In this document: positions 4,684 through 63,568 of the stretch, in pieces | Position numbering within the stretch: the stretch's first letter is position 1 | How the letters are laid out: the number at the start of each line of letters is the position of its first letter | From: Octopus bimaculoides | Taxonomy: Eukaryota | Assembly: GCF_001194135.2 (NCBI RefSeq) | Contig: NC_068994.1 | Location: forward strand, 12,908,156 to 12,972,155 | DNA length: 64,000 nt | Reading direction: 5' to 3' | Notes under the pieces: generated by a model | What the model saw: the letters and a program-made list of their open reading frames with translations, nothing else | What the model was told of the DNA's origin: nothing | Databases searched by the model: none | Made by a program: the position numbers and the translations under genes

Positions 4684-5404
4684 TCTTACTCTTTACTCTT
4701 TTACTTATTTCAGTCATTTGACTGCAGCCATGCTGGAGCACCACCTTTAGTCAAACAAATCGACCCCAGGACTTATTCTTTGGAAGCCTAGTACTTATTT
4801 TATCGGTCTCTTTTGCCAAACCGCTAAGTTACGGGGACATAAACACACCAGCATCGGTTGTCAAGCAATGTTGGGGGGGGCAAACACAGACACACAAACA
4901 CACACATACACACACACACANNNNNNNNNNNNNNNNNNNNNNNNNNNNNNNNNNNNNNNNNNNNNNNNNNNNNNNNNNNNNNNNNNNNNNNNNNNNNNNN
5001 NNNNNNNNNNNNNNNNNNNNNNNNNNNNNNNNNNNNNNNNNNNNNNNNNNNNNNNNNNNNNNNNNNNNNNNNNNNNNNNNNNNNNNNNNNNNNNNNNNNN
5101 NNNNNNNNNNNNNNNNNNNNNNNNNNNNNNNNNNNNNNNNNNNNNNNNNNNNNNNNNNNNNNNNNNNNNNNNNNNNNNNNNNNNNNNNNNNNNNNNNNNN
5201 NNNNNNNNNNNNNNNNNNNNNNNATATATATACATATACATATATACGATGGGCTTCTTTCAGTTTCCATCTATCAAATCCACTCACAAGGCTTTGGTCG
5301 GCCCGAGGCTATAGTAGAAGACACTTGCCCAAGGTGCCACACAGTGGGACTGAACCCGGAACCACGTGGTTGGTAAGCAAGCTACTTACCACACAGCCAC
5401 TCCT
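4684..5404 (-). mobile_element. tRNA-derived SINE family B with internal microsatellite (gap)
   Basis: Head GGAGTGGCTGTGTGGTAAG...GGTTCAGTCCC, CORE-like CCTTGGGCAAGT, central (TA/CA)n, tail GAAATAAGTAAAAGAGTAAAGAG. Confidence 0.8.
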
Positions 5405-6803: not shown

Positions 6804-6984
6804 GTAAAAACATATATATGGCTGTGTGGTAAGAAGCTTGCTTTCCAACCACACGGTTCCGGGTTCAATCCCATTGCGTAGTACCTAGAACAAGTTTCTT
6901 TTTCTATAGCCTTGGGCTGACTAAAGTGTTGTGAGTAGATCTGGTAGAAGGAAACTGAAAGAAGCCCATCATATATATATATAT

Positions 6985-7332
6985 ATATGAATAATAACAA
7001 TAAATGGAGCAAAACGCATATAAATAAAATTTCCTTTAATTCCTACACCTGTTTCAAAATGTATGTGTACTCTACTCCAAAGTAAGAGCTGCTGGAATTC
7101 CACATGTATTCATCGTGGAATGAGGTAACTTACGAGTTATAACTCATAAGTTACCTCATCATTTCGCATTTGTCTTGCTTCTATATGTTGTTTCCCTGAC
7201 GATGAATATATGTGGAATTCCAGCAGCTCTTACTTCTTTGGAGTAGTGGCACATATATTTTGAAACATATGTAGGAATTAAAGGAACTTTTATTTATATG
7301 TGTTTTGCTCCATCTATTGTTATTATTCATAT
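6985..7332. mobile_element. Foldback (inverted-arm) element with hammerhead-like motif; probable Penelope-like-element relic
   Basis: Arms of about 130 bp are imperfect reverse complements; the spacer contains a further palindrome (GAGGTAACTTACGAGTTATAACTCATAAGTTACCTC); hammerhead-like motif at 7192-7277. Confidence 0.75.
7192..7277 (+). ncRNA. Minimal type-I hammerhead ribozyme-like motif
   Basis: TTCC-CTGACGA-T-[GAATATATGTG...CACATATATTT]-T-GAAA-CATATG-TA^GGAA: stem I TTCC/GGAA, 11-bp stem II, palindromic loop III, putative cleavage after A7273; non-canonical U.U at the base of stem II. Confidence 0.65.
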
Positions 7333-8068
7333 CTACTCAAAATGCATCACTTCAACTTGGTATCTCTACCTATAAAACTGGTGTGATATCCTGTTTTTTT
7401 GTGTGATTTTTGCTACCCATGGTAACTATTAACATATTTACATTGTCAAAGTATTTTTTAACTGAGATAATATTAATATATATNNNNNNNNNNNNNNNNN
7501 NNNNNNNNNNNNNNNNNNNNNNNNNNNNNNNNNNNNNNNNNNNNNNNNNNNNNNNNNNNNNNNNNNNNNNNNNNNNNNNNNNNNNNNNNNNNNNNNNNNN
7601 NNNNNNNNNNNNNNNNNNNNNNNNNNNNNNNNNNNNNNNNNNNNNNNNNNNNNNNNNNNNNNNNNNNNNNNNNNNNNNNNNNNNNNNNNNNNNNNNNNNN
7701 NNNNNNNNNNNNNNNNNNNNNNNNNNNNNNNNNNNNNNNNNNNNNNNNNNNNNNNNNNNNNNNNNNNNNNNNNNNNNNNNNNNNNNNNNNNNNNNNNNNN
7801 NNNNNNNNNNNNNNNNNNNNNNNNNNNNNNNNNNNNNNNNNNNNNNNNNNNNNNNNNNNNNNNNNNNNNNNNNNNNNNNNNNNNNNNNNNNNNNNNNNNN
7901 NNNNNNNNNNNNNNNNNNNNNNNNNNNNNNNNNNNNNNNNNNNNNNNNNNNNNNNNNNNNNNNNNNNNNNNNNNNNNNNNNNNNNNNNNNNNNNNNNNNN
8001 NNTAGATCAATGTGTGTGTCTGTATTTTCCCTCACCTCCCCACCAGGATCCTCCCTGATCCAATTGAC

Positions 8069-9082: not shown

Positions 9083-9470
9083 GGCGCAGGAGTGGCTGTG
9101 TGGTAAGTAGCTTACTTACCAACCACATGGTTCCGGGTTCAGTCCCACTGTGTGGCACCTTGGGCAAGTGTCTTCTACTATAGCCTCGGGTTGACCAAAG
9201 CCTTGTGAGTGGATTTGGTAGACGGAAACTGAAAGAAGCCCGTCATATATATGTGTGTTTGTGTGTCTGTGTTTGTCCCTCCAACATCGCTTGACAACCG
9301 ATGCTGGTGTGTTTACGTCCCCGTAACTTAGCGGTTCGGCAAAAAAGAGACCGATAGCATAAGTACTAGGCTTACAAAGAATAAGTCCTGGGTGTCGATT
9401 TTCTCGACTAAAGGCGGTGCTCCAGCATGGTCGCGCAGTCAAATGACTGAAACAAGTAAAAGAGTAAGAG
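9083..9470 (+). mobile_element. tRNA-derived SINE family B, full length
   Basis: Complete head to tail; probable TSD TATCAT (9076-9081 and 9471-9476). Other copies at about 850-985, 6820-6970, 18370-18680, 23458-23760, 48115-48460, 53336-53715, 54340-54480, 58690-59180 and 63890-64000. Confidence 0.82.
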
Positions 9471-10580: not shown

Positions 10581-12083
10581 ATTCAGCTTACTCTGTCAAA
10601 TGTAATGCTTATTTATTCACATTGTTTTTTTTTTTTAAATAATCCTGCATTATCTCCTAGCTTTGAGACTTTGATGATGTGGCTGTATATTTTCAGAATG
10701 ACACTGTAGGGTAGGTGTAATAGGTCAGATCTGGTTAGTTTTAACATAAAACAGATGGAATATTTAGATTACATATGATCAATTTAAATGCTAAATGGTT
10801 CATTAAAACATTAACAGTCCATAAAGTGTTCCCTCGGACAATTCAACATAAGCTTAACTAATAAAAGATGTGAGAGTGAACAACGTCACATGATAGAGTC
10901 ATGTTCATTGATTGGATGACATTTAATAAACAATGCTTTGTGTCGAGGCAACTGGAGTTGTCTCAGCCATCCTTTACCAGGTCTTTGAATTGTCATTGAA
11001 CTTTGCCCTTTTCTAGGTAAGAGCATTAACCCTATGTAAACCCACTTTTTACCTCTGGGAAGAGGTAGTCCATGTTAGTCTGACTTCTATTTTTTGACCT
11101 GTCCAGCAGGAAAGTCCCCCAACAGGAGCTTGCTCTCCACCAGCATAGCTCTCAGGGTCATTCATCATCATCATCATCATCACCGTTTAACGTCCGCTTT
11201 CCATGCTAGCATGGGTTGGACGATTTGACTGAGGACTGGTGAAACCAGATGGCAACACCAGGCTGCAATCTGATTTGGCAGAGTTTCTACAGCTGGATGC
11301 CCTTCCTAACGCCAACCACTCTGAGAGTGTAGTGGGTGCTTTTACGTGTCACCCGCACGAAGGCCAGTCAGGCGGTACTGGCAACGGCCACGCTCAAAAT
11401 GGTGTATTTTATGTGCCACTCGTACAAGAGCCAGTCCAGGGGCACTGGCAACGATCTCGCTCGAAAATCCTTACACATGTCACGGGCTCAAGTGCCAGAA
11501 AGGCNNNNNNNNNNNNNNNNNNNNNNNNNNNNNNNNNNNNNNNNNNNNNNNNNNNNNNNNNNNNNNNNNNNNNNNTCATTCATCATCATCATCATCATCA
11601 CCGTTTAACGTCCGCTTTCCATGCTAGCATGGGTTGGACGATTTGACTGAGGACTGGTGAAACCAGATGGCAACACCAGGCTGCAATCTGATTTGGCAGA
11701 GTTTCTACAGCTGGATGCCCTTCCTAACGCCAACCACTCTGAGAGTGTAGTGGGTGCTTTTACGTGTCACCCGCACGAAGGCCAGTCAGGCGGTACTGGC
11801 AACGGCCACGCTCAAAATGGTGTATTTTATGTGCCACTCGTACAAGAGCCAGTCCAGGGGCACTGGCAACGATCTCGCTCGAAAATCCTTACACATGTCA
11901 CGGGCTCAAGTGCCAGAAAGGCGACGCTGGGCACAGGTGCTATCCCACACTGTAACAAGGACTGCATCTTGTGATGGATTTCAGTCATATCAAGGGCTAT
12001 ATGACATACCATCACAACCCTGTTTTTCTACTGTCATTTATTGTGTTTAAATATTTTAAAAACTTGTTTAAATCATTCTACAG

Positions 12084-12193
12084 GAATGTGGAAAAACGCA
12101 CTCAAACAGAACGTTGGACAACATTCAAGCAGATTTGTCCGCCTGGACTAATTAATAAGCGAAGAGCAGCCTGTCTGTTTTGTGCTTTACTTA
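12084..12193 (+). CDS. REC8: REC8-like exon, C-terminal winged helix part 1 (NVEKRTQTERWTTFKQICPPGLINKRRAACLFCALL)
   Basis: ctacag|...|gtaagt; 110 nt, phase 2-1; F..L...R..AA..F..LL motif of the Rad21/Rec8 C-terminal domain. Confidence 0.9.
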
Positions 12194-12508
12194 GTAAGTT
12201 AAATACTATTTCAATATCCGAATTAATATCATCATCATCATCGTCATCATTCACTATCCACTTCTCCATGTTTGCAGGAGTCATACAGAATTTGTAGAAG
12301 CAAATTTTTTACAGCTGGATGCCCTTTCTGTCATCAAACTTCACCTGTTTCCATGTGAGGTAATATTTCCCCATAGCCAGATATATTTTCACATAAGATT
12401 GGAAACGAAGGACCCAGCTTATATGATGGCGACATTTATTTACAGCTATCATGTGATGTTAAGGCAGAGAAACACTAACACACACATATATATACATACA
12501 TATATATT

Positions 12509-12925
12509 TATATTTATATAAGGGCATTACTACAGAATAATGCCACACACCAGACTTCCCAAATAAACACATTTTAGTACCGAATGCGAAGAAAAGAAAC
12601 CAACCTTTTTTTAAAAAAAATTCAACTATGTATCGACCGATTTCACGATTACCAGAATGAAATCTAGTTTCCGCTCGTCAGCATAGAATAGTACCAATAT
12701 ATATAAATAAACAAAATCCTCACCTTGGTACTATACTATGCTGACGAGCGGAAACTAGATTTCATTCTGGTAATCGTGAAATCGGTCGATACATTGTTGA
12801 GTTTTTTTTTAAAAAGGTTGGTTTCTTTTGAGGGTTGCTTTTCCTCGCATTCAGCACTAAAATGTGTTTATTTGGGAAGTCTGGTGTGTGGCATTATTCT
12901 GTAGTAATGTCCTTATATAAATATA
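12509..12925. mobile_element. Foldback element with ~185-bp inverted arms carrying a hammerhead-like core
   Basis: 12509-~12697 and ~12727-12925 are near-perfect reverse complements; CTGACGA...GAAA TCGG TC at 12741-12787. Confidence 0.75.
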
Positions 12926-13254
12926 AACGAATAATTATATTCTTGGGAATAGAAATTTCCCTTATGAATTTTTTTACACACTAACTTCCTGATAAAATTC
13001 TTGTAAAAGATTTTTATCCTATTTTGAATTTCGAATACATATATATTTATATATGTGCTTTTAGCATATTCAAACTGATATTGGCATTGCATATTTACTT
13101 ATCACACGCTTAGCGCACTCACCCCTTAATTTAAATAACAGCATCATATCTTCTCTTGTTTCTATCCCCGCCAAGTGATCTCAGTAAAACCACAAACCAT
13201 TTTGTACCTGACACTTCAAATATTTCTCTCTCTTTCTTTTTTCATCCGTTCCAG

Positions 13255-13343
13255 TGGCTCATCAGAACTGCCTGATACGCCTCAAACAGAAGGAACCATA
13301 CGGTGATATCTACATCAGATTAAGGACAACACCACCACCATAA
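13255..13343 (+). CDS. REC8: REC8-like terminal coding exon (MAHQNCLIRLKQKEPYGDIYIRLRTTPPP*)
   Basis: Long pyrimidine tract and ccag| acceptor; Q.EPYGDI.I kleisin C-terminal signature; TAA at 13341-13343; ATTAAA at 13400-13405. Confidence 0.92.
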
Positions 13344-27302: not shown

Positions 27303-27802
27303 ATTACTAGAGCTGTATTTAATTGATATCGTCTTCAGACCTAAAGTGTAATGGTGATGGAACAGTTTAGTAGAGAGGGCCATTAGAGCAAAGGCACAGG
27401 CCTGGAAGGACTGAAAATGTGGTGGTAGCAAGGATCTGTATCAAGTTGCTAGACAGGAGGCTAGGAGACAGGTATATTTCGCTAGGGGAGACACAGATAG
27501 AAGTTTGCAAATGTTCTGCAGCATGAAATCCAGTGGCTTGAGGTATTTTTGATTGCAAGATGGTCTTGCAGTCGAAAATGCCTCAAGCCACTGGATTTCA
27601 TGCTGCAGAACATTTGCAAACTTCTATCTGTGTCTCCCCTAGCTAAATATACCTGTCTATCAACATGATACAGATCCTTGCTACCATCACATTTCCATTC
27701 CTCCAGGCCTGTGTCTTTCCTCTAATGGCCCTCTCTACTACACTGATCCATCACCATTACACTTGTCTGAAGGCGATATGAATTAAAAGCAGCTCTAGTA
27801 AT
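27303..27802. repeat. ~500-bp near-perfect palindrome (hairpin, 3-nt loop at 27561-27563)
   Basis: 27303-27560 reverse-complements 27564-27802, with scattered substitutions and one short insertion in the left arm. Confidence 0.9.
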
Positions 27803-29684: not shown

Positions 29685-31190
29685 CAAGGGTGGGGTGAAA
29701 AGATGCCAGAGCTGTGAAATCTTGCATGCATTAATTTAAATCTTCTTATCAATAACTGCATTGTTTATTTCCAGGCAAACTGACATCTGACTATTCAAAG
29801 ATGACTTCAGAAGTAACTAGTAGCAGTTTCTCTTGCAAGTGGACAAAATTTGGTCTTGTGATGTTATTAAGTACCCGAGAAAAAGGGTTTAGCCTTCCAA
29901 CAACAGTCATGTAGACAAGGTTGCTACATTAGAGAATGACACTCCAGCTTTATTAACTGTACAAAAGTGGAAAGGGAGAGTCTTGAAGATGACCCAAGGT
30001 CTGGACATTCTACAACTACCATTACTGAGGTAATGATCGTGTTCACCACATGGTGATGGATGACAGGTGATTGACTATAAATCAATTAGCTAATGCTAAT
30101 AGCCTATCCTGTGAGAGAGTTGATAATATTCAGCACAATGAACTTGGCAAGATGAATATTTCTGCTCGGTGGGTGTCATGTCTTCTAACACCTGATCAAA
30201 AGTGCACCAGGTTCATCACATCACAGGAAAATCTGATATTGTTTTAGGCAGATCCAACTGGTTTCCTTGAATGTTTCCTAACCCAGAATGAATGTTGGGA
30301 TCATCACTGAGTTAGAGAGAAAGAGACAATTCATGCAATGGAAACATCTCTTCTCACCTGTTCCAAAGAAGGCCAAGGTAGTTTCATCTGCAGAGAAGGT
30401 GATGACCTCAGTTTTGGGGGATGCAAAATGGTATTGTGATTATTGATTACTCCCTGACTGGCTCCTGTGCCAGTGGTACGTAAAAAGCACCATCGGAACG
30501 CAGCCGATGCCAGTACCTCCTGACTAGCTCCTGTGCCAGTGGCATGTAAAAAGCACTCACTACACTCTCAGAGTGGTTGGCATTAGGAAGGGCATCCAGC
30601 TGTAGAAATGTTGCCAAATCAGATTGTAGCCTGGTGCAGCTGCTGGCTCTCCAGACCTCAGTCAAACCGTCCAACCCATGCCAGCATGGAAAACAGACAT
30701 AAAACGATGGATGATGATGATCAAAAGGACCACACCATCAATAGAGAGTATTATGCCAGCTGGCTGAGGCAGTTACAAAAGGTTATCAAAACCAAACACC
30801 CAGGAAAACAAATGAAAGAAGACTTATTTCATCAGTAAAATGCTCCAGCACTAAAGTTTTTATTTCAATGGCTACTGTGTGTGACTGTGGCTTTGAACTG
30901 GTTGATCACCCTCTCTATTCTCCTGATTTGGCCCCATCTGACTCATCTATTTCCCAACATGTAAAATACTTGACTGGGAACCAGTATTGCAGTGATGATA
31001 TCATACACGTTGTTGATGACTTTTTTGATCAACAGGAAGAAAGCTTTTTCATCAATGGGCTCCAAGCACTGTAACACTGATGGAAGAAGTGAGTGGACTG
31101 CAAGGGGGATTATGTTGAAAAATAAACCTCATTTGGTCACATTCCATGAAAGTATCTTGTCAGCCTATGAACTTTTTAGCTGAACCTCAC
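29685..31190 (+). mobile_element. Decayed mariner transposon, interrupted by a SINE-tail insertion
   Basis: Frameshifted transposase with SARWV, IDY.QK.HTIN.EYYA and HP.YSPDLAPSD motifs; right TIR-like end GTCAGCCTATGAACTTTTTAGCTGAACCTCAC; left boundary approximate. Confidence 0.88.
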
Positions 31191-31427
31191 ACTGCAAGCC
31201 AAAATTCAAATTTCATCAGTTTTATAATTTTAGAAAAAAAGAACAGTTCATTTTTGAAACAAAAGAGAAATAGGTTTAATTTGTCCTAATTTGTTTTTAC
31301 TCTTAGGCTAAACAAAATGAAGATTTGATAAGCTATTTTTATGTCTTTTTCTTTGGTATGATCACAGTTAAAATACACAAATTCTAAAAGCGTTTTTGAC
31401 CAGTGTTTAAATTGAATAATAACTTAC

Positions 31428-32038
31428 CTTGTGGAACATTTTGAGCCACCAATTCTGCGTGTACCACTTCTGTCATGACATGCATCAATTAACTTTCGTA
31501 AGAGAAGTAGACACTCTCGAAATGTAGAGAAGAAAGGATGATGGCTGACAATGCATAGTGATGTTAGGGTATTATTCCTAACCCGGCTGGCTGTTTTTAG
31601 ACGTCGTCTAGTCCTTGGTGATCTTTGTGGGTGATCAGTGTCTCCATGATGGGGTGCTAATTTATTGGGATCTCCATAATGATCAAAACGATCACGAGAC
31701 TTGTCACTTGAATGGGTTTTCCGTTCAAAAGGACGGAAAAAGTTTACACATATTCCATATCGAACAATTCCAGAATCTTTTTCAGTTAATGTAAATACAA
31801 AAGGTGTAGTTTCTCGCAGACTAGTTCTTCTGGGCCCTTCACTGATGCAACCTTCTGGTTGACAGAAGAAGATAACATCGTTTGGAAGTGGGAAATCTTT
31901 GTGGTCTTCAACTGGATAACGACGAAGCAGCTCAGGTGTTTGTGCTACATTATTATTATGATTTGGGTTGCGAGTTCCCACAATCACAATGTAATCCAAC
32001 AGTCGTGGTGAAAAGTATTTTTTCATGTATTCACACAT
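31428..32038 (-). CDS. MADD: MAP kinase-activating death domain protein / Rab3 GEF, first coding exon (uDENN domain)
   Basis: Peptide PRLLDYIVIVG...AQTPELLRRYP.EDH.DFPLP.DV.FFCQPEGC...FVFTLT.KD.G..RYGICVNF...LTSLCIVSHHPFFSTFRECL is unmistakably MADD. Acceptor cacttag| just before the ATG (exon starts 32039); donor |gtaagt at 31427; ends phase 2. Confidence 0.96.
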
Positions 32039-32458
32039 TCTAAGTGTGAACGGTGTATACTTTCAAATTATAGGTATGTGCTAGTGTTAGCACAATGGTT
32101 TTTATGTAATAGGTAGATAGTAAGCAAGCATCTTTTCCAGAAGAACTTCAATTGTAGTTGTTTTCATTCATTTCAGTGGAATGACATAAACCAACTAAAA
32201 TTAAACTGGTGGAATATAAATCCATAATTGTGACAACTAACCTGTCAAAATAAATGAAATGGAACAGATGTAATGGAAACAATATTATTTAAGATTCAAT
32301 AACTAAAACATATTTTCATATGGAAAATTAGTAAAGTTAATATCTTGTTTGAAGATTGGTTATTTCATTTTAATTGTGATAAATTTAGTTTATTTGAACT
32401 TTTATGTAAATTTAAATAATAATGGTGAAACTCAGGTGTTAAGAAGAACAATAGTAAA

Positions 32459-36699: not shown

Positions 36700-37400
36700 T
36701 ATGCTGCTTGTGTAACAAAAGATAACATTTTGCATATGTCTGTATTCAATACAAAGAGCCAATGTGACATTCAGCATGCTTCAACAAGCTTACAACAATG
36801 AAGCAATGGGTCATACACAATGTTTCAAGCAGCATGGGTGCTTCAAAAGCAGAACATCCCTGGAAGATGATGAGCAATCTGGAAGACCTGCAATGAGCGT
36901 TACCCCAAGAAATGTGGTATTGTGCATTGAGAATTCAACCCCCAGAGCCAGACCATCAATTGGGAGTTCTGTATGACATTTTGAAGCATTTGAGGGAGGA
37001 CATTTAGTCAAAGTGACTGGATCTGTGGAGCAGGAAGAATTGCATTCTTCACTGAGCTCCCTTCATTTGTGAGTTTCTTGCCAAAAACAACATAGTATCA
37101 CTTTCACACCAGCCCTATTTGCCACATTTAGCACTTGTGGACTTCCATCTCATCCCAAAGATGGAAATGCATCTGAAAGGTTGCTGTTTTAACACTACTG
37201 TCAAGATCCAGAGCAAATCACTGAAGGTCCTCAACTCACTTACGGAAAACAACTTTTAGGCTGGATTCCAAAATTGGCAGGAACGCTAGGACCAGTGTAT
37301 TGCTGTGCCAAGTGAGTATTTTGAAGGAAATGTTAAAACTTAGGTAAATAAGTTATTTATTATTAAACATAACTAGTCCTGGAACATTTTGATACCACCT
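36700..37400 (+). mobile_element. Internally deleted mariner relic
   Basis: SLEDDEQSGRP (HTH region) and degenerate HQPY.P.LA..DF.L.PKM.M.LKG..F motifs; boundaries approximate. Confidence 0.75.
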
Positions 37401-41429: not shown

Positions 41430-42330
41430 ATATATATAGAGTTAGGGATCTGTCATAAGGTAAAAGTTAGCAATGAGTATAGCAGTGAATTTAGTGTGCA
41501 GGTAGTAGTTCACCAAGAATAGGTTCTCAGTCCCCTCTTGTTTAACATAATCCTCCAGGCCATAACGGAGGAATTTAAGACTAGCTGCTCCTGAAAGCTC
41601 TTCTGTGCTAATGATCATATTCCTTTAACTGAGTCTCTACCAGAATTAGAAAACTTTCAGGTGTGGAGGCAAGGTCTAATATCAAAGTGCTTTGGAATTA
41701 ATTTAGCAGTGATCGATGTACTAGTAGTAGGAAGGCAAAAAAGATTACTAAACCCTTCAGGGAGATGACCCTACTTGATATGTAGAAAAGGTGTAGGTAG
41801 AAATTCCATATGGTGTACTCAGTGCAAGCTATGGGCACATAAGAGGTGCAGCAGCATCACAAGAAGGTTAACAGAGAAAGTAGTCTTTGTGTGTGGCAGA
41901 TACAATAAATACTAAGCATGAACAGGATATAGACTTTCCCAAATGTCTAGGGATATTCTTAGAAGTAAATAGTTTCTGTTACATGGGTGACCAAGTTAGC
42001 AGTGGAAGAGGATGCTCTGAAAGCATAGTTGCTAGAATAAGAACAGGCTGGGCAAAGTTCAGAGAGCTATTACTTTTGTTGGTAACAAAGGGCCTTTCCC
42101 TCAGAGTGAAAGGCAGACTATGATGCCTGTGTATGAACAGCTATGCTACGTGGCAATGAAATGGGTTGTGACTGCAGCAGCATCAGATGTAGTGTGCAAG
42201 AGAGAAAACTGTGCTGATATGGTCATGTGATGTGTATGGATGAGGACAGCCACACAAAGAAGTGTCAGTCTCTAACTGTAGAGGGAACCTGTGGAAGAGG
42301 TAGACCCAAGAAGATGTTGAACCTCACAAA
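41430..42330 (+). mobile_element. RTE-clade LINE reverse-transcriptase relic
   Basis: Frameshifted VHQ.SVLSPLLF.IILQAITEEFKT.C..LL.A.D (YADD region), F.Y.GD..SSG.GC.ES..ARIR.GWAKFRELL and GRGRPKK motifs. Confidence 0.85.
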
Positions 42331-43889: not shown

Positions 43890-44620
43890 ACAGGAAAAAA
43901 GGATGAGGATTCTTTGGATTGATGCCTTAAGAGATATATGAACCTTCAGAACCTTCCGGTCCAGAGAACAAGGTGTCATCATTCCACTTTTCCCCTCCTT
44001 TGTACGGCCACACCTCGAATACTGCTGTCCCTTGTGGTCTCCCCATACAAAACAAAACATCTCGAAAATTGAATCCCCCCAGAGGGCACTCACTAAACAA
44101 ATTGAGGGCATGACTAATCTCAATTATTGGGACCACCTTAAAGCCTTGAAACTCTACTCTCTCCAGCGCCGCTGCAAGCAGTACATCATTTGTACGATGT
44201 GGAGAATATACAGCCAGCATTGCCCAAATGACCTGAACATTAGTTTCAAGGTTCATCCAAGGCTGGGACCATGGGCCATACATACCCTGCCCAGTTCAGG
44301 ATGGATCACAACATATAGGTACACTGTGACACAGTTTTTTTCCCTTAACAGGCCCTGCCCTGTTTAACATTGTCCCAAAACTGATCAAAGAGGAAAAGGA
44401 TCCCATCACCTTTAAATGGAGTCTGGATAGATTTCTTCAAGGAATATCAGACAAGCAACCCATACTTGGATACAACTTACTCAACAAGAACTCACTACTT
44501 GAATGGACCATAAACAAAACTTGACTTAAAAAGGATTTAGATAATCCTATCAGGTGGTGCTATTAAGTTAGACATGGCCTGGACCAATCTTTGATTGAAA
44601 CATATCTAAGTTTTATGAGA
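43890..44620 (+). mobile_element. CR1/L2-group LINE 3' relic
   Basis: FVRPHLEYCCPLWSPH.K..I.KIE..QR..TK.I.G...L.Y...LK.L.LYSL.RR motif, typical of the CR1 ORF2 C-terminus. Confidence 0.85.
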
Positions 44621-52299: not shown

Positions 52300-53486
52300 A
52301 TATATATANNNNNNNNNNNNNNNNNNNNNNNNNNNNNNNNNNNNNNNNNNNNNNNNNNNNNNNNNNNNNNNNNNNNNNNNNNNNNNNNNNNNNNNNNNNN
52401 NNNNNNNNNNNNNNNNNNNNNNNNNNNNNNNNNNNNNNNNNNNNNNNNNNNNNNNNNNNNNNNNNNNNNNNNNNNNNNNNNNNNNNNNNNNNNNNNNNNN
52501 NNNNNNNNNNNNNNNNNNNNNNNNNNNNNNNNNNNNNNNNNNNNNNNNNNNNNNNNNNNNNNNNNNNNNNNNNNNNNNNNNNNNNNNNNNNNNNNNNNNN
52601 NNNNNNNNNNNNNNNNNNNNNNNNNNNNNNNNNNNNNNNNNNNNNNNNNNNNNNNNNNNNNNNNNNNNNNNNNNNNNNNNNNNNNNNNNNNNNNNNNNNN
52701 NNNNNNNNNNNNNNNNNNNNNNNNNNNNNNNNNNNNNNNNNNNNNNNNNNNNNNNNNNNNNNNNNNNNNNNNNNNNNNNNNNNNNNNNNNNNNNNNNNNN
52801 NNNNNNNNNNNNNNNNNNNNNNNNNNNNNNNNNNNTAGAAACTCTGCCAAATTAGATTGGAGCCTGGTGTTGCCATCCTGTTTCACCAGTCCTCAGTCAA
52901 ATCGTCCAACCCATGCTAGCATGGAAAGCAGACGTTAAACGACGACGATGATGATGATGATGATGATATATATATAAATTGCTGAGAAAACATGTTCGCT
53001 ACTTCCAACAGTTGGTTTAAAGACCAGATCCAACTAAATCTGCATTATCTACAGAGGGAAGAAATTTCAATCAACTGATTTTGTATGAGTTATCTCTCTT
53101 GTTTGTTATTTTTAGATTTTAAACATGGCTAAAGGGAGTACTGTCGACTGCTTGGTTGGATATTTCTAGTTAATGGAAGTTTTTCAATTTACCCATAGGC
53201 ATAGACCACCTTTTTTGATAAGCAGACTGCTTGAGACATGACTCATTATCAGGCAGTGCTGCAAAAACAATTCAAGGTTATTTTACATTCAGAAAGTCCT
53301 GCAGGCTGCAGTTTGCTCATGATATTTACCATAAGCGCAGGAGTGGCTGTGTGGTAAGAAGCTTGCTACCCAACCACATGGTTCTGGGTTCAGTGTGACA
53401 CTTTGGGCAAGTGTCTTCTACTATAGCCTTAGGATGACCAAAGCCTTATGAGTGGATTTGGTAGACGGAAACTGAAAGAAGCCTAT

Positions 53487-53549
<63 letters not shown>

Positions 53550-53728
53550 GGCAGGCTTCTTTTAGTTTCTGTCTACCAAATCCACTCACAAGGCTTTCGT
53601 CACTCCGAGGCTATAGTACAAGGCACTTGCACTAAGTGCCACATGGTTCTGGGACTGAACCCAGAACCATGTGGTTGGTAAGCAAGCTACTTAACACACA
53701 CCCACTCCTGCACCTATAAAATAGCTAT

Positions 53729-53800: not shown

Positions 53801-55030
53801 GGAAAGGCTTCCACAATGTTTCCATTTCAAGTAATTGGCATCTCATTCCCCTCTCTCTCCATATACATGCGAATAGCTACCACAATGTTTCCATCTACCA
53901 GATTCACTCACAAGGGTTTGGGTCGAAACGGGCTGAAGGTTCTATCCATACAATGGTCCTGAATCCAGAACTGTGTGGTTGGAAAGCAAACTTCGTACCC
54001 ACAGCTGTGTTATACAGATTTTAAAACAACCACACCTGTGTAACAAATATCAAAATCCTATTTGTGAACTCGTTTAATTACAAGCTTGCTTTTTCCTCTC
54101 ATGACACTGATCAGTTTTTTTGTTTGTAACACGCATATTAACAAATGTTTTATGCGTGATTAAGTTGTTACATATCAAAGTCCAACACTAAACAAAGTGC
54201 CACCCTCGCACTTGTTCTCAAACTACATATGACTGTTCAAACAAATTAATCAATCAGTAAAAGAGTGATCTAGATAAATGCATTGTTTCTTATCTACTCG
54301 TTAGATAATTTATATATAGATGTGTGTGTGTGTATAAGCTTGGCTGTGTGGTAAGTTTGCTTCTTTACCACATGGTTCTGGGTTCAGTCCCATTGCATGG
54401 CACCTTGGGAAATTGTCTTCTACTGTAGCCTCAGACTGGATCTGATAGATGGAAACTGAAAGAAGCCTGTCACACACACACACACANNNNNNNNNNNNNN
54501 NNNNNNNNNNNNNNNNNNNNNNNNNNNNNNNNNNNNNNNNNNNNNNNNNNNNNNNNNNNNNNNNNNNNNNNNNNNNNNNNNNNNNNNNNNNNNNNNNNNN
54601 NNNNNNNNNNNNNNNNNNNNNNNNNNNNNNNNNNNNNNNNNNNNNNNNNNNNNNNNNNNNNNNNNNNNNNNNNNNNNNNNNNNNNNNNNNNNNNNNNNNN
54701 NNNNNNNNNNNNNNNNNNNNNNNNNNNNNNNNNNNNNNNNNNNNNNNNNNNNNNNNNNNNNNNNNNNNNNNNNNNNNNNNNNNNNNNNNNNNNNNNNNNN
54801 NNNNNNNNNNNNNNNNNNNNNNNNNNNNNNNNNNNNNNNNNNNNNNNNNNNNNNNNNNNNNNNTATATATATATAATGCGAGAGAGTTAGGGATTGAGGA
54901 TTCAACCCACTAAGGGATAGTATCTATCCAATATACTGCTGGGAGGGTACCCAATTATTGTTACACTAGTGTTATACGAAGTGCAATAAATGGGAGCGGG
55001 TAAAAGGGGTGGGGGGGTTTACCCTAAATT

Positions 55031-55318
55031 TATATATCAATTAGAAAATGGAGGATAATATGCTGAACCCAACGACTTGCAGACAGTGTATCCCGTTGAA
55101 TTCATTAATTTAATTCATAGCTAAAGTGACAAAAAAACTCACAAAGTACAGGTGTTTATGAAAAACCATGTTATTTTGCCAACCGGGTTTACAGATAGAA
55201 GTACAAAGTACATAAGGAATTAGAGAATGAACGAATTAAATTAATGAATTCAACAGGATACACTGTCTGCAAGTCGTTGGGTTCAGCATATTATCCTCCA
55301 TTTTCTAATTGATATATA
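55031..55318. mobile_element. MITE-like element with ~86-bp almost identical terminal inverted repeats
   Basis: 55031-55116 versus 55233-55318: one visible mismatch; TA-rich flanks. Confidence 0.75.
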
Positions 55319-56878
55319 TATATATATATACACATACGCACATACATATATATGTATGTATGATTGTTTGTATGTATGTATAAAGGTAACTTAGTCATTT
55401 TACTGGTCTTCAGCCCAAATTTGAAGCCATTATTTCTGCCAGTGAAATGAACGATTTCATTTGTATGTCAATGATGTTCATTTACTCCCCTTGTGTGATG
55501 TCTAAACAAAGGTACACACATGCACATATACATTTACACACATACACACACACACACACACATATAGTGGAGGTGCATAGCTTAGTAGTTAGGATGTTGG
55601 ATTCACAACCATAAGATTGTGGTTTCAATTGTGTTCTTGAGCAAAACACTTCATTTCATTTTGCTCCAATCCACTCAGGTGTAGAAATGAGTTTAGCCTT
55701 GAGAAGGATGGGCTCCACCAGGCTTTCTTGGTCCAAGATACGCTACATGGCTGCAATGCCCCAACAACCCTGGGGGGTTAAGCGGCTTGTCAATTGTCAA
55801 TCATCATCATCATCATCATTGGTTAATGTCCACTTTCCATGCTAGCATGGGTTGGACGATTTGACTGAGGACTGGTAATCCAGAAGGCTGCACCAGGCTC
55901 CAATTTGATTTGGCAGAGTTTCTACAGCTGGATGCCCTTCCTAACGCCAACCACTCCAAGAGTGTAGTGGGTGCTATTATGTACCACCAGCACGAGGGCC
56001 AGTCAGGTGGTACTGGCAACGGCCATGCTCAAGTGGTGTTTTTTAATTGCCACCTGCACAGGAGCCAGTCCAGCAGCACTGGCAACAACCTCGCTCAAAT
56101 AGTTTTTCACGTGCCACCGATGCAAGTGCCAGTAAAGTGACGCTGGTAACCATCACGTTTGAATGGTACTTTTAATGTGCCAGCGGTATGGAAGCCAGTC
56201 AGGTCAATTTAGGGATTTAGTGGAAGACAGTTGCCCAATGTGCTGCATAGTGGGACTGAACCTGGAATGACACGGTTTGGGAGCAAGCTTCTTAACCACA
56301 CATCCATACCCATGTTTATACGTGCGTTTATGTTTATGTGACACATACATTCTCTCTCTCTCACGCACACAACACCTGTTACACCTTGTCATGCTGTGAT
56401 TAAAGTTTACACGTTAACAAAATTAAGACTAAAAATAAAATACAGTCACAAACAGATGACAGCTGATGAGAACTTGAAATCTTGTTATCATTCCTTCAAC
56501 GAAGTAATTATGAATAAATGTTACATTAAAACACATGGGCACAGGTTGACATTTATACAAATGTACTCTACGCCACCTCACCACTTACCAGCACACCTTA
56601 TTCTTTTTTATAAGCCATGACAGTTATTACAGGTGTCACATAACTCAATATTACAGGTGTGCTAAAGGTGGCAAGCTGATTGAATCGTTAGTATGCCAGG
56701 TAAAATGCTTAGTAACATTTCATGTCCCCACATTCTGAGTTCAAATTCTGCCTAGGTCAACTTTACTTTTAATCCTTTCACGATTGATAAAATAAGTACC
56801 AGTTGTATACTGGTGTTGATGTTATAGAATTAGCCCCTCTTCAAAAATTACTGGCCTTGCACCAAAATTTGAAACCAA

Positions 56879-58078: not shown

Positions 58079-58195
58079 ATGTCAACTGGTTTCAAAGTTG
58101 ACCGCTTGGATCATTTTGTAATTACGGTCAAGGATATCGAGCAGACAGTCAGTTTTTATACTAAAGTGCTGGGAATGGACTTGGTCTCGTTTAAG
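58079..58195 (+). CDS. GLOD5: Glyoxalase domain-containing protein 5 (VOC family), coding exon 1 (MSTGFKVDRLDHFVITVKDIEQTVSFYTKVLGMDLVSFK)
   Basis: Acceptor ttgccag| before 58052 and donor |gttagt; RLDH.V.TV.....T..FY..VLGM motif. Confidence 0.93.
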
Positions 58196-59390
58196 GTTAG
58201 TTGTTGAAAGTGCATACGACTTCACACAGCTGTCTCTACAGATTCATATAAACATGTACAAGCATTCTTTCATACATACATACATACATACATGCACATA
58301 TGCTTACATGTATAAATCTGTATGTATACATGCATACTTATTTAAAATATATGTACGTGTGAATAGAGAAAAAACAAAGACTGAAAATTTTCAGACAATC
58401 AATATTCTTTTCTACTCTAGGCACAAGGCCCGAAATTTTTGGGGAGGGGGGGCCAGTCGATTAGATTGACCCCAGTATGCAACTGGTAATTAATTTATTG
58501 ATCCCAAAAGGATGAAAGGCAAAGTCGACCTCGGCAGAATTTGAACTCAGAACGTAACGACTGACGAAATACCACTAAGCATTTCACTCGGCATGTTAAT
58601 GTTTCTGCCAGCTCCTTGCCTTTAAAATAATCTTTTTTACTCTAGGCGCAAGGCCGGAAATTTGAGGGGAGGGAGTTCAAACGATGAATATTGAAGTATA
58701 CTCTTTTACTCTCTCTTTTACTTGTTTCAGTCATTNNNNNNNNNNNNNNNNNNNNNNNNNNNNNNNNNNNNNNNNNNNNNNNNNNNNNNNNNNNNNNNNN
58801 NNNNNNNNNNNNNNNNNNNNNNNNNNNNNNNNNNNNNNNNNNNNNNNNNNNNNNNNNNNNNNNNNNNNNNNNNNNNNNNNNNNNNNNNNNNNNNNNNNNN
58901 NNNNNNNNNNNNNNNNNNNNNNNNNNNNNNNNNNNNNNNNNNNNNNNNNNNNNNNNNNNNNNNNNNNNNNNNNNNNNNNNNNNNNNNNNNNNNNNNNNNN
59001 NNNNNNNNATATATATATACATATATACGACAGGCTTCTTTCAGTTTCCGTCTACCAAATCCACTCACAAGGCTTTGGTCAGCCTGAGGCTATAGTAGAA
59101 GACACTTGCCCAAGGTGCCACGCAGTGGGACTGATCCCAGAACCATGTGGTTGGTGAGCAAGCTACTTACCACACAGCCATGTACATATATGCAATTATA
59201 CTTATAGACATTCATACTTACATGCGTGCTATATACATGTATACTCCAAACCATGTGAGTGCGAAGCCAGCTTTTTAAACACGTGGCCATGCTTGAGCTT
59301 AGTAATTATTTATTTATTTATTTATTTTTGCTTTGTAAATTGGTAAAACATGTTTTCACCTATTTCTTAACTTTATTTTTGAAATGGTAG

Positions 59391-59567
<177 letters not shown>

Positions 59568-60134: not shown

Positions 60135-60338
<204 letters not shown>

Positions 60339-63084: not shown

Positions 63085-63290
63085 CTTTCACTTGTGCAGG
63101 AAATAGATTTCGTCAAATGTCCAGGGAGATTCTTGGCGGTAGTAGATAGTTTTCATTACTGAGGTGACCAAATTAGCAAAAGTGGATATTGCTCTGAAAG
63201 TGTAGTTACCAGAATAAGAACTGGCTGGGTAAAGTTCAGAGAGCTATTAACATTGATGGTAACAAAAGGCCTCTCTCTCTGCATGAAAGG
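63085..63290 (+). mobile_element. Short RTE LINE fragment
   Basis: F.Y.GD...SGY..ESV..RIRTGW.KFRELL.LMVTKGLSL; same family as 41430-42330. Confidence 0.75.
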
Positions 63291-63568
63291 CCATGCTGGG
63301 GCAATGCCGTCAGGAGCTTTTAGCTGTCCAAATCAACCGCAGTACTTATATTTTTTTAAGTCTAGTACCTATTCCATTGATCTTTTAACACATAATGCGC
63401 AACGGGCCATGATCATGGCCATCAGGCAAAGGTTGCCAGGCCATGATTGTGGTTCAGATAAATGCATTTAATTTATGGGTGTTTGTTTGTTGGTATGTCA
63501 GTCAAGAGATAGTTCAACTAATGACTTTTCAGATGATGTAAAACTTGCCACCATTATATACTAAGAAG

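What the first reader, a model, noticed from the sequence alone, without database searches (positions are those of the whole stretch)
7192..7277. Type-I hammerhead-ribozyme-like fold in the sense strand of a REC8 intron
Seen: TTCC|CTGACGA|T|GAATATATGTG-(35 nt)-CACATATATTT|T|GAAA|CATATG|TA^GGAA. All catalytic-core residues are in order (C3-A9, G12-A15.1, U16.1, H17=A), with a 4-bp stem I, an 11-bp stem II and a palindromic loop III. The opposite arm holds a decayed minus-strand copy (GAAA CAGGTG TA GGAA); both loops derive plausibly from CACGTG. Established: Penelope-like retroelements carry minimal type-I hammerheads with a vestigial stem III and palindromic loop that cleave mainly as dimers. 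Inference: this is a PLE-derived ribozyme transcribed as part of the meiotic kleisin pre-mRNA. The U.U mismatch (or extra U) at the base of stem II may reduce or abolish activity.
Basis: partly seen in the sequence, partly recalled or inferred. Interest (0 to 1): 0.85.

Follow-up and report, generated by a model that had tools for sequence, protein, structure and literature searches.

The report
Retroelement relic with hammerhead-like ribozyme motif
The hammerhead-ribozyme-like motif is really there and is unlikely to be chance, but it sits in one arm of a 345-bp hairpin-shaped transposon remnant of an already known kind (Penelope-like-element hammerheads), where it is probably masked and has no role in the host cohesin gene.

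Summary
The sequence at 7192-7277 (+) is as described: 4-bp stem I, CUGACGA, 11-bp stem II with a 35-nt distal part, GAAA, a 2-bp stem III with palindromic AUAU loop, and UA^ at 7273/7274. It is the right arm of an imperfect palindrome, E1 (6989-7335), next to the (TA)n tail of a SINE. The left arm holds a decayed copy lacking CUG. No Rfam hammerhead model matches, even at about 9 bits, and the G10.1-C11.1 pair is absent (U.U, or G.U plus a bulge). Three things still argue against chance. Scrambled-core controls give 0.0125 descriptor hits per window. A second, unrelated twin-arm element, E2 (12496-12938), has the same architecture on both arms. E1's apparent defects all have published precedents in Penelope-like-element (PLE) minimal hammerheads and in axolotl HHR_Amex2. 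The best reading is a relic of a PLE-type twin inverted insertion, so it is a new member of a known kind. With the opposite arm in the same RNA, the whole element folds at -210.9 kcal/mol and the ribozyme helices have pair probability 0.0, so cleavage of the pre-mRNA is unlikely. The host gene is a Rad21/Rec8-family kleisin; REC8 itself is unproven. No further copies could be retrieved, so covariation and activity remain untested.

The parts
6968..6988 (.). (TA)n tail of a SINE-like repeat (6812-6988); probable AT-rich target of the insertion
   Evidence: 6812/6819-6988 matches more than 10 other copies in the window, all ending in (TA)n. One search shows the sequence.
6989..7335 (.). E1: imperfect palindrome (twin inverted arms with outer ends as 3' ends) that contains the finding
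   Evidence: Searches show the inverted repeat (86-nt and 37-nt arm pairs at 92-97% complementarity; 79% over 354 nt); the whole element folds at -210.9 kcal/mol, z = -29. One search gives the arm alignment.
7120..7159 (.). Central 40-bp palindrome (the head-to-head junction of the two arms)
   Evidence: repeat I3: 20-nt arms, 95% complementary, 0 nt between them.
7040..7120 (-). Decayed hammerhead-like copy in the left arm: it lacks CUG of the CUGANGA box, has two mismatches in stem II, and has a non-palindromic loop III (CAGGUG)
   Evidence: alignment; sequence.
7160..7191 (+). About 33 nt present only in the right arm, just upstream of the motif (an asymmetry between the arms)
   Evidence: alignment (gap in left_arm_revcomp).
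7192..7195 (+). Stem I, 5' strand (UUCC)
7196..7202 (+). Core box C3-A9 (CUGACGA)
7203..7203 (+). Extra or unpaired U between A9 and helix II
   Evidence: An extra nucleotide at this position is reported as typical of PLE minimal hammerheads.
7204..7260 (+). Helix II: 11 bp (7204-7214 with 7250-7260, first pair G.U) plus a 35-nt distal part (7215-7249)
   Evidence: this helix forms in the minimum-energy fold; pair probability about 0.95 in isolation.
7261..7261 (+). Unpaired U before G12. It is either the partner of U7203 in a U.U mismatch or a bulge if helix II slips by one
   Evidence: Both arms have TTTT before GAAA.
7262..7273 (+). G12-A13-A14-A15.1, helix III (A-U and C-G pairs) with palindromic AUAU loop, U16.1 and A17; predicted cleavage site between 7273 and 7274
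7274..7277 (+). Stem I, 3' strand (GGAA)
7278..7335 (+). 58-nt tail from the cleavage site to the outer (3') end of the arm
   Evidence: For comparison, in the anole PLE reverse transcription starts about 85-92 nt downstream of the hammerhead cut site.
12496..12938 (.). E2: a second twin-arm element, unrelated in sequence, with a hammerhead-like motif on both arms; it lies in the last intron of the kleisin gene
   Evidence: arms 12593-12697 and 12725-12829 at 90%; 12496-12601 and 12833-12938 at 91%; no sequence homology to E1.
12626..12686 (-). E2 minus-arm motif: CUAUG | CUGACGA | GCGG-(22 nt)-UCGU | GAAA | UCGGUCGA (self-complementary) | UA^ | CAUAG
12736..12796 (+). E2 plus-arm motif with the same core; stem I has one mismatch (CAUUG)

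Best explanation
E1 (6989-7335) is a relic of a Penelope-like-element (PLE)-type retrotransposition event. Two 5'-truncated copies of a short hammerhead-bearing RNA were inserted head-to-head, with their 3' ends outward, into the (TA)n tail of a SINE. The site lies inside, or just upstream of the 3' exons of, a Rad21/Rec8-family kleisin gene.

The right arm still encodes, on the gene's sense strand, a complete but non-canonical minimal type-I hammerhead motif. It has a 4-bp helix I, an extended helix II, U.U or G.U at positions 10.1/11.1, and a 2-bp helix III with a palindromic loop of the kind that lets such ribozymes act as dimers. The left arm has decayed.

In its parent element the motif would have processed multimeric transposon RNA. 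In this locus it has no tandem partner on the same strand. It is transcribed immediately after its own antisense arm, so it is locked in a roughly 150-bp duplex. Self-cleavage of the pre-mRNA should therefore be negligible, and the insertion is neutral for the host.

Shown: the motif, the palindrome, the flanks, the second element, the statistics and the thermodynamics. Inferred: the PLE origin, the twin-priming mechanism, the lack of activity, and the intronic position of E1.
For: The motif is present exactly as described.

Chance is low. Across 719 scrambled-core decoys on the real window there were 9 hits (0.0125 per window), and none gave 2 or more. The true core gives hits in two independent elements.

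E2 was found with a descriptor fixed beforehand. It shares features that the descriptor does not require: twin inverted arms with the motif reading outward from the centre, AT-rich or microsatellite flanks, a self-complementary loop 3, N7 = C, H17 = A, a weak 10.1/11.1 pair and an extended helix II.

Published precedents cover E1's unusual features:
- PLE minimal hammerheads have helix I of 4-5 bp, helix II of 6-8 bp, an extra nucleotide between 9 and 10.1 and a palindromic 15.2-16.2/loop 3. Most occur as single motifs, but some occur as dual motifs 100-700 bp apart on opposite strands (PMC4209133).
- PLE insertions are 5'-truncated, often have an adjacent inverted copy that creates an inverted repeat, carry the hammerhead near the 3' end, and for some clades favour (TA)n or other microsatellites (PMC8557442).
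- A purified PLE protein cleaves AT-rich DNA and extends both strands. It starts reverse transcription about 85-92 nt downstream of the hammerhead cut site (PMC11167929).
- An active axolotl type-I family has a U.U mismatch at the base of helix II and a 2-bp helix III capped by a tetraloop (PMC7229834).

Masking: the whole element folds at -210.9 kcal/mol. All hammerhead helices have pair probability 0.0 once the other arm is included.
Against: No Rfam hammerhead family matches E1 or E2, even with 77-99-nt search spaces and E up to 10.

The G10.1-C11.1 pair, described as highly conserved in PLE minimal hammerheads, is absent in both elements.

No PLE reverse transcriptase or GIY-YIG ORF, and no pLTR, is linked to either element. 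No PLE coding sequence was seen in the window.

No other copy of E1 or E2 was found in the window, in metagenome or genome contigs, or in the protein database. There is therefore no covariation test.

The only second copy of E1, the left arm, lacks CUG and has non-compensated changes in helix II. This is equally compatible with the right arm having gained the motif.

The near-symmetric junction and AT-rich flanks also fit a palindromic MITE. Two other hairpin elements in the window have no hammerhead core.
Confidence: 0.6

Rival explanations
1. E1 and E2 are palindromic MITEs or foldback DNA-transposon remnants, or local inverted duplications. The hammerhead-like strings would then be chance products of AT-rich, hairpin-rich sequence with no ribozyme ancestry.
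For: No Rfam hammerhead hit. G10.1-C11.1 is missing. The left arm lacks CUG, and its helix II changes are not compensatory. The local fold is no better than shuffles. Other long hairpin elements with AT-rich flanks and no hammerhead core exist in the window. A TA dinucleotide can be read on both sides of E1. A genome of gigabase size would hold hundreds of chance matches at 0.0125 per 64 kb.
Against: Two independent elements match in one 64-kb window, against 0.0125 expected. None of the 719 decoys gave two hits, and none gave a stem II of 6 bp or more. Both elements also share features that were not searched for: the outward orientation, a self-complementary loop 3, and the extra nucleotide after A9 in E1. 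The decoy hits did not fall in E1 or E2, so the hairpin-rich context does not explain the matches.
Confidence: 0.25
2. The motif is an active intronic ribozyme. It would cleave the kleisin pre-mRNA co-transcriptionally, alone or by pairing in trans through its palindromic loop, and so influence splicing or the level of the meiotic cohesin transcript.
For: All core residues are intact on the sense strand. The hammerhead fold is within 2.5 kcal/mol of the minimum-energy fold in isolation. An active natural family tolerates U.U at the base of helix II. Intronic hammerheads are known in amniotes; this last point is from my own knowledge and was not tested here.
Against: The antisense arm is transcribed first and the duplex wins completely at equilibrium. 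There is no second sense-strand copy nearby for dimer formation (no direct repeats). Helix I is 4 bp with no recognisable loop 1-loop 2 contacts. Consensus PLE minimal hammerheads show no cleavage as single motifs and only low activity as dimers. In vertebrates, retrozyme hammerhead elements are reported to be depleted from introns.
Confidence: 0.07
3. What matters is the hairpin rather than the ribozyme. The roughly 345-nt intronic dsRNA would be a substrate for Dicer or ADAR (small RNAs or hyper-editing), and the hammerhead-like string would be a bystander.
For: A near-perfect 150-bp duplex is predicted. Long-hairpin miRNA-precursor models give weak hits to E1, and stronger but still sub-threshold hits to E2, because both are hairpins.
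Against: No expression, small-RNA or editing data are available. The element is single-copy in the window. The hits to miRNA models are generic hairpin matches far below their gathering scores.
Confidence: 0.08

Closest known systems
Minimal type-I hammerheads of Penelope-like elements (Cervera & de la Pena 2014, PMC4209133)
   Same: E1 shares the conserved core, a helix I of 4-5 bp with no defined loop 1, an enlarged helix II, an unpaired nucleotide between A9 and helix II, and a complementary 15.2-16.2 pair with a palindromic loop 3. The published motifs occur mostly as single motifs from truncated elements and sometimes as dual motifs on opposite strands 100-700 bp apart. They show little or no activity as single motifs.
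   Different: G10.1-C11.1 is replaced by U.U (or by G.U plus a bulged U). Helix II is much longer (11 bp plus a 35-nt distal part). No pLTR, reverse transcriptase or GIY-YIG ORF is linked to the element. Family-level covariation is not available.
Axolotl retrozyme hammerhead HHR_Amex2 (Cervera & de la Pena 2020, PMC7229834)
   Same: It is a type-I motif with a 2-bp helix III capped by a tetraloop and a U.U mismatch at the base of helix II. It cleaves weakly as a monomer (22% in 1 h) and efficiently as a dimer.
   Different: Amex2 sits in 350-bp tandem direct repeats that yield circular RNAs, and it keeps loop 1-loop 2 contacts. E1 has no tandem repeat, its partner copy is on the opposite strand, and it has no recognisable tertiary contacts.
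PLE insertion architecture: inverted 5'-truncated copy adjacent to the element, hammerhead near the 3' end, microsatellite/AT-rich targets (Craig et al. 2021, PMC8557442; PMC11167929)
   Same: E1 has head-to-head inverted arms with their 3' ends outward. The motif lies 58 nt (E1) or about 135 nt (E2) from the outer end. (TA)n or (CA)n(TA)n lies at one flank. Cleavage and extension of both target strands would yield this geometry.
   Different: Both arms are very short (150-200 nt). They meet at an almost symmetric junction. There is no full-length copy, and no 30-40-bp 'tail' extension could be recognised.
Palindromic MITEs / foldback elements
   Same: A long imperfect palindrome of 350-450 bp with AT-rich flanks, non-coding, and sitting in an intron.
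   Different: No clear target-site duplication and no other copies in 64 kb. MITEs are not known to carry hammerhead cores, yet two unrelated elements here do.

Membership tests
Hammerhead ribozyme (general definition) | Conserved core in order: C3 U4 G5 A6 N7 G8 A9, G12 A13 A14, the A15.1-U16.1 pair, and H17 (not G) | tested here: met
   CUGACGA at 7196-7202, GAAA at 7262-7265, U7272 and A7273.
Hammerhead ribozyme (general definition) | Three helices around the core, with open helix I for type I | tested here: met
   Helix I is 4 bp, helix II 11 bp and helix III 2 bp. The helices are weak: pair probability in isolation is 0.3-0.5 for helix I, about 0.95 for helix II and 0.02 for helix III.
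Hammerhead ribozyme (general definition) | G10.1-C11.1 closing pair of helix II | tested here: not met
   U7203.U7261, followed by G.U. Alternatively G10.1.U11.1 with a bulged U. E2 also has G.U at this position.
Hammerhead ribozyme (general definition) | Loop 1-loop 2 tertiary contacts needed for activity at physiological Mg2+ | tested here: inconclusive
   Helix I is open, with no defined loop 1. The distal part of helix II is 35 nt. No contacts could be assigned from the sequence.
Hammerhead ribozyme (general definition) | Site-specific Mg2+-dependent self-cleavage | not testable with these tools
   This requires in vitro transcription and cleavage assays.
Rfam hammerhead families (all hammerhead models in Rfam 15, including Hammerhead_1, RF00163) | Covariance-model score at or above the gathering threshold | tested here: not met
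   No hammerhead hit at the gathering threshold over the whole window. None at E up to 10 on 451 nt or on 99 nt. The same holds for E2.
PLE minimal hammerhead (Cervera & de la Pena 2014) | Short helix I (4-5 bp), enlarged helix II, and an extra nucleotide between A9 and 10.1 | tested here: met
   compared. There is an added unpaired U on the 3' side that the published consensus does not have.
PLE minimal hammerhead (Cervera & de la Pena 2014) | Palindromic 15.2-16.2 pair and loop 3 (capacity to form dimers) | tested here: met
   C7266-G7271 with an AUAU loop. The left-arm copy is not palindromic (CAGGUG). E2 has UCGGUCGA, which is self-complementary if G.U pairs are allowed.
PLE minimal hammerhead (Cervera & de la Pena 2014) | Belongs to a genomic consensus family with covariation and compensatory changes | not testable with these tools
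   No further copies were found in the window, in metagenome or genome contigs, or through the protein database.
PLE minimal hammerhead (Cervera & de la Pena 2014) | Located in the pLTR of an element encoding a reverse transcriptase and a GIY-YIG endonuclease, or traceable to one | not tested
   No PLE ORF is adjacent, and no PLE coding remnant was noticed among the ORFs of the window. These ORFs were not systematically scanned. Tracing E1 to a parent element needs the whole genome.
PLE insertion architecture | 5'-truncated copy with an adjacent inverted copy, 3' ends abutting an AT-rich or microsatellite target | tested here: met
   compared. This layout is also compatible with a palindromic MITE.
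Non-LTR retrozyme | Tandem direct repeats of about 170-400 bp, each carrying a type-I hammerhead | tested here: not met
   One search found no direct repeats beyond a 16-nt TA-rich match. The second copy is inverted.
MITE (DNA-transposon derivative) | Terminal inverted repeats flanked by a target-site duplication, and many near-identical copies | tested here: inconclusive
   Inverted termini are present. A TA can be read at both ends but is trivial next to (TA)n. There is no second copy in 64 kb.

The most novel reading that the evidence does not exclude
E1 and E2 might represent a so far undescribed class of hairpin-shaped ('twin-arm') non-autonomous elements. Each copy would carry a minimal hammerhead on both strands. 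The sense-strand ribozyme in the kleisin introns would be conditionally unmasked, for example during a co-transcriptional window, by helicases, or by A-to-I editing of the duplex. It would then cut the pre-mRNA, giving a ribozyme switch on a meiotic cohesin gene.
Probability: 0.04. Interest if true: 0.75.

Novelty: new member of a known kind. Interest (0 to 1): 0.3.

Why it matters
If the reading is right, this locus is one more example of how Penelope-like retroelements scatter minimal hammerhead motifs through animal genomes, introns of essential genes included. It would also show that twin inverted insertion automatically neutralises the ribozyme, because it is placed next to its own antisense. 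That is useful for annotation: Rfam models miss such motifs, and descriptor searches need family-level support. It adds no new mechanism. It would matter more only if cleavage of the kleisin pre-mRNA were demonstrated.

Tried and rejected
1. Rfam searches at the gathering threshold and at permissive E-values, over the whole window and over small sub-regions, gave no hammerhead hit.

2. Looking for more copies failed by every route. Self-BLAST of the window found only the two arms. A 20-mer shared by both arms, scanned against metagenome and prokaryote genome contigs, gave three chance hits with no extension. A concatenated six-frame peptide query against the 5.8-billion-protein database gave nothing. 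Covariation therefore could not be tested.

3. Identifying the organism or gene through protein searches with putative exons gave no homologues. The organism remains unidentified.

4. I first read the U.U mismatch, the 4-bp helix I and the opposite-strand copy as arguments against a hammerhead. I withdrew that after reading the PLE and axolotl papers.

5. E1 and E2 are not sequence homologues, so they cannot be pooled into one family alignment.

6. Supplementary files that might list published PLE hammerhead sequences, for building an independent covariance model, are not held. I did not build a model from remembered sequences.

7. A SINE-like repeat with CUGAGGA...GAAA, present in 10 or more copies, was checked. 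It has no hammerhead architecture.

8. Pfam did not confirm my impression of mariner transposase remnants at 30.7 and 36.7 kb.

Full report
**Observation.**
The parts are:
- UUCC (7192-7195), stem I 5' strand.
- CUGACGA (7196-7202), core box C3-A9.
- U (7203).
- GAAUAUAUGUG (7204-7214), helix II 5' strand.
- A 35-nt distal part (7215-7249).
- CACAUAUAUUU (7250-7260), helix II 3' strand.
- U (7261).
- GAAA (7262-7265).
- CAUAUG (7266-7271).
- U7272 and A7273, with the predicted cleavage site after A7273.
- GGAA (7274-7277), stem I 3' strand.

All hammerhead core positions are present in the order expected for type I. Helix II is 11 bp, including one G.U. Next to the core, helix II is closed by U7203.U7261. 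Because four U's precede GAAA, it can also be drawn another way: an unpaired U after A9, a G10.1.U11.1 wobble, and a one-base bulge.

**Context.**
The motif is not free-standing. It is the right arm of an imperfect palindrome, here called E1, spanning about 6989-7335.
- The two arms are about 91% identical from ACGAUG outward.
- They meet at a 40-bp perfect-spacing palindrome (7120-7159).
- The right arm has about 33 extra nucleotides just upstream of the motif.
- The reverse complement of the left arm is a decayed copy. It has UUCC-ACGAUG, so CUG is missing. It has two uncompensated C/U differences that put A.C mismatches in helix II. Its loop III is CAGGUG.

The left flank (6812-6988) is a SINE-like repeat with more than 10 copies in the window, ending in (TA)n. 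The right flank is unique.

**Is it more than chance?**
I wrote a relaxed type-I descriptor around the candidate:
- helix I of at least 4 bp;
- CUGANGA;
- an optional mismatch at 10.1/11.1;
- helix II of at least 4 bp with a loop of up to 60 nt;
- GAAA;
- 2-12 nt between A15.1 and U16.1;
- UH.

The descriptor finds the candidate and one further site. On the real window, 719 decoys with permuted core boxes gave 9 hits in total, or 0.0125 per window. No decoy gave two hits, and none had a helix II of 6 bp or more. Two hundred dinucleotide shuffles gave 0 hits. One hit is therefore a 1% event per window. That would still mean hundreds of chance hits in a gigabase genome, so a single hit proves little.

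**The second site is the important control.**
It lies in another twin-arm palindrome, E2 (12496-12938), with no sequence similarity to E1. Each E2 arm, read outward from the centre, carries CUAUG | CUGACGA | GCGG-(22 nt)-UCGU | GAAA | UCGGUCGA | UA^ | CAUAG. The minus arm (12626-12686) is intact. The plus arm (12736-12796) has one helix I mismatch.

E2 shares features with E1 that the descriptor did not ask for:
- a head-to-head arrangement with the motif pointing outward;
- a microsatellite or AT-rich flank;
- a self-complementary loop 3;
- N7 = C and H17 = A;
- a weak 10.1/11.1 pair and an extended helix II.

Given E1, a second independent chance hit has a probability of about 0.01.

**Evidence against.**
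- No Rfam hammerhead family matches E1 or E2 at the gathering threshold, or at E up to 10 when only 77-99 nt are searched, which corresponds to about 9 bits.
- The G10.1-C11.1 pair is absent in both elements.
- The 101-nt local fold is no more stable than shuffles (z = -0.14). Its minimum-energy fold forms helix II only. The hammerhead fold lies 2.5 kcal/mol above the minimum for E1 and 0.3 kcal/mol above it for E2.
- No additional copies of either element could be retrieved from the window, from metagenome or genome contigs, or through the protein database.
- With only two E1 copies, it cannot be decided whether the left arm lost CUG or the right arm gained it.

**Comparison with the literature.**
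This changed my reading of the apparent defects.
- *Cervera and de la Pena 2014* (PMC4209133). They describe metazoan PLE minimal hammerheads with a helix I of 4-5 bp and no defined loop 1, a helix II of 6-8 bp, a conserved extra nucleotide between A9 and 10.1, and a palindromic 15.2-16.2/loop 3. Most occur as single motifs from truncated elements. Some occur as dual motifs 100-700 bp apart on opposite strands. There is no cleavage as single motifs and only low cleavage as dimers.
- *Craig et al. 2021* (PMC8557442). PLE insertions are heavily 5'-truncated. They often have an inverted 5'-truncated copy that creates inverted repeats. The hammerhead lies near the 3' end. For some clades there is a bias for (TA)n or other microsatellites.
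- *The anole PLE study* (PMC11167929). The protein cleaves AT-rich DNA and extends both strands. Reverse transcription starts about 85-92 nt downstream of the hammerhead cut site. That would produce the geometry seen here: two outward-facing arms, each ending 58 nt (E1) or about 135 nt (E2) after the predicted cut site, abutting AT-rich DNA.
- *The axolotl HHR_Amex2 family* (PMC7229834). It has a U.U mismatch at the base of helix II and a 2-bp helix III with a tetraloop, yet it self-cleaves: 22% as a monomer and efficiently as a dimer.

Of the defining features, only G10.1-C11.1 and the Rfam score were tested and failed.

**Mechanism and function.**
I conclude, at about 0.6 confidence, that E1 is a relic of a PLE-type twin inverted insertion carrying a minimal type-I hammerhead motif. 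E2 is a second such relic.

In this locus the ribozyme is very unlikely to act, for three reasons:
- The 371-nt RNA containing both arms folds into one long hairpin (-210.9 kcal/mol, z = -29).
- In that context every hammerhead pair has probability 0.0. In isolation the values are 0.3-0.5 for helix I and 0.95 for helix II.
- The antisense arm is transcribed first, and no same-strand partner exists for dimer formation.

The rivals are:
- a palindromic MITE with chance motifs (0.25);
- a hairpin that matters as dsRNA (0.08);
- a ribozyme that is active in the pre-mRNA (0.07).

**Host gene.**
A two-exon peptide was joined from about 12.05-12.2 kb and 13.24-13.34 kb on the + strand. It hits Pfam Rad21_Rec8 (PF04824) at E = 1.9e-7 and 30.7 bits, above the cut-off. 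The last exon alone gave E = 0.028. Comparison with remembered human REC8 and RAD21 C-termini slightly favours REC8 but is not decisive.

E2 therefore lies in the last intron. E1 lies about 5 kb upstream of the penultimate exon on the sense strand and is probably intronic, but no upstream exon was confirmed. The organism could not be identified.

**Verdict.**
The element is best filed as a new member of a known kind, PLE-associated minimal hammerheads in twin inverted insertions, with moderate-to-low interest. Family-level covariation, linkage to a PLE, and cleavage assays are the decisive missing tests.

Noticed in passing
window 12496-12938: E2 is a second twin-arm palindrome, unrelated in sequence to E1, with a complete hammerhead-like motif on both arms. 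The minus arm (12626-12686) is intact. The plus arm (12736-12796) has one stem I mismatch. It lies in the last intron of the kleisin gene and is flanked on the left by a (CA)n(TA)n-like microsatellite.
   Followed up: yes
window ~12050-12200 and 13240-13340 (+): These are the last two exons of a Rad21/Rec8-family kleisin. The joined peptide ...NKRRAACLFCALL|VAHQNCLIRLKQKEPYGDIYIRL... hits PF04824 at E = 1.9e-7. The exact splice sites were not determined.
   Followed up: partly
window 6812-6988 and more than 10 other places (e.g. 5230-5399, 9093-9252, 53344-53704, 59011-59187): A SINE-like repeat of about 170 bp ending in a (TA)n tail. Several copies abut assembly gaps (N runs).
   Followed up: partly
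window 1707, 6229(-), 8581, 11229, 11647, 52896(-), 55865, 61425: A second abundant repeat begins tggacgatttgaCTGAGGActggtGAAAccag. It contains CUGANGA and GAAA boxes but has no hammerhead helices. It accounts for about a quarter of all CUGANGA occurrences in the window.
   Followed up: partly
window 27331-27790 and 55025-55324: Two further long hairpin or inverted-repeat elements, of about 460 bp and 300 bp. Neither has a hammerhead core. The second is followed by (TA)n. Both are single-copy in the window.
   Followed up: partly
window 31427-32062 (-): A long open exon encoding a uDENN domain (PF03456, E = 1e-13), so a DENN-domain gene lies on the minus strand.
   Followed up: partly
window 58100-58204 (+), probably with 59391-59567 and 60135-60335: An exon with the N-terminal part of a Glyoxalase/VOC domain (PF00903, E = 3.5e-8). 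The two downstream ORFs look like further exons by eye, but Pfam did not confirm them.
   Followed up: partly
window 41884-42120, 43942-44364, 63163-63468 (+); 30745-31071, 36716-36973 (+): ORF fragments that look to me like LINE reverse-transcriptase C-terminal regions and mariner-type transposase remnants. Pfam gave no significant hit for the four tested (30745-31071, 36716-36973, 41884-42120, 43942-44364); 63163-63468 was not scanned. This rests on my impression only.
   Followed up: partly
window, 13 N runs (e.g. 7484-8002, 4921-5223): The window is a draft assembly with many gaps, 37% G+C, and frequent (TA)n, (CA)n and trinucleotide repeats. A 519-nt gap starts only about 150 nt to the right of E1.
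   Followed up: no
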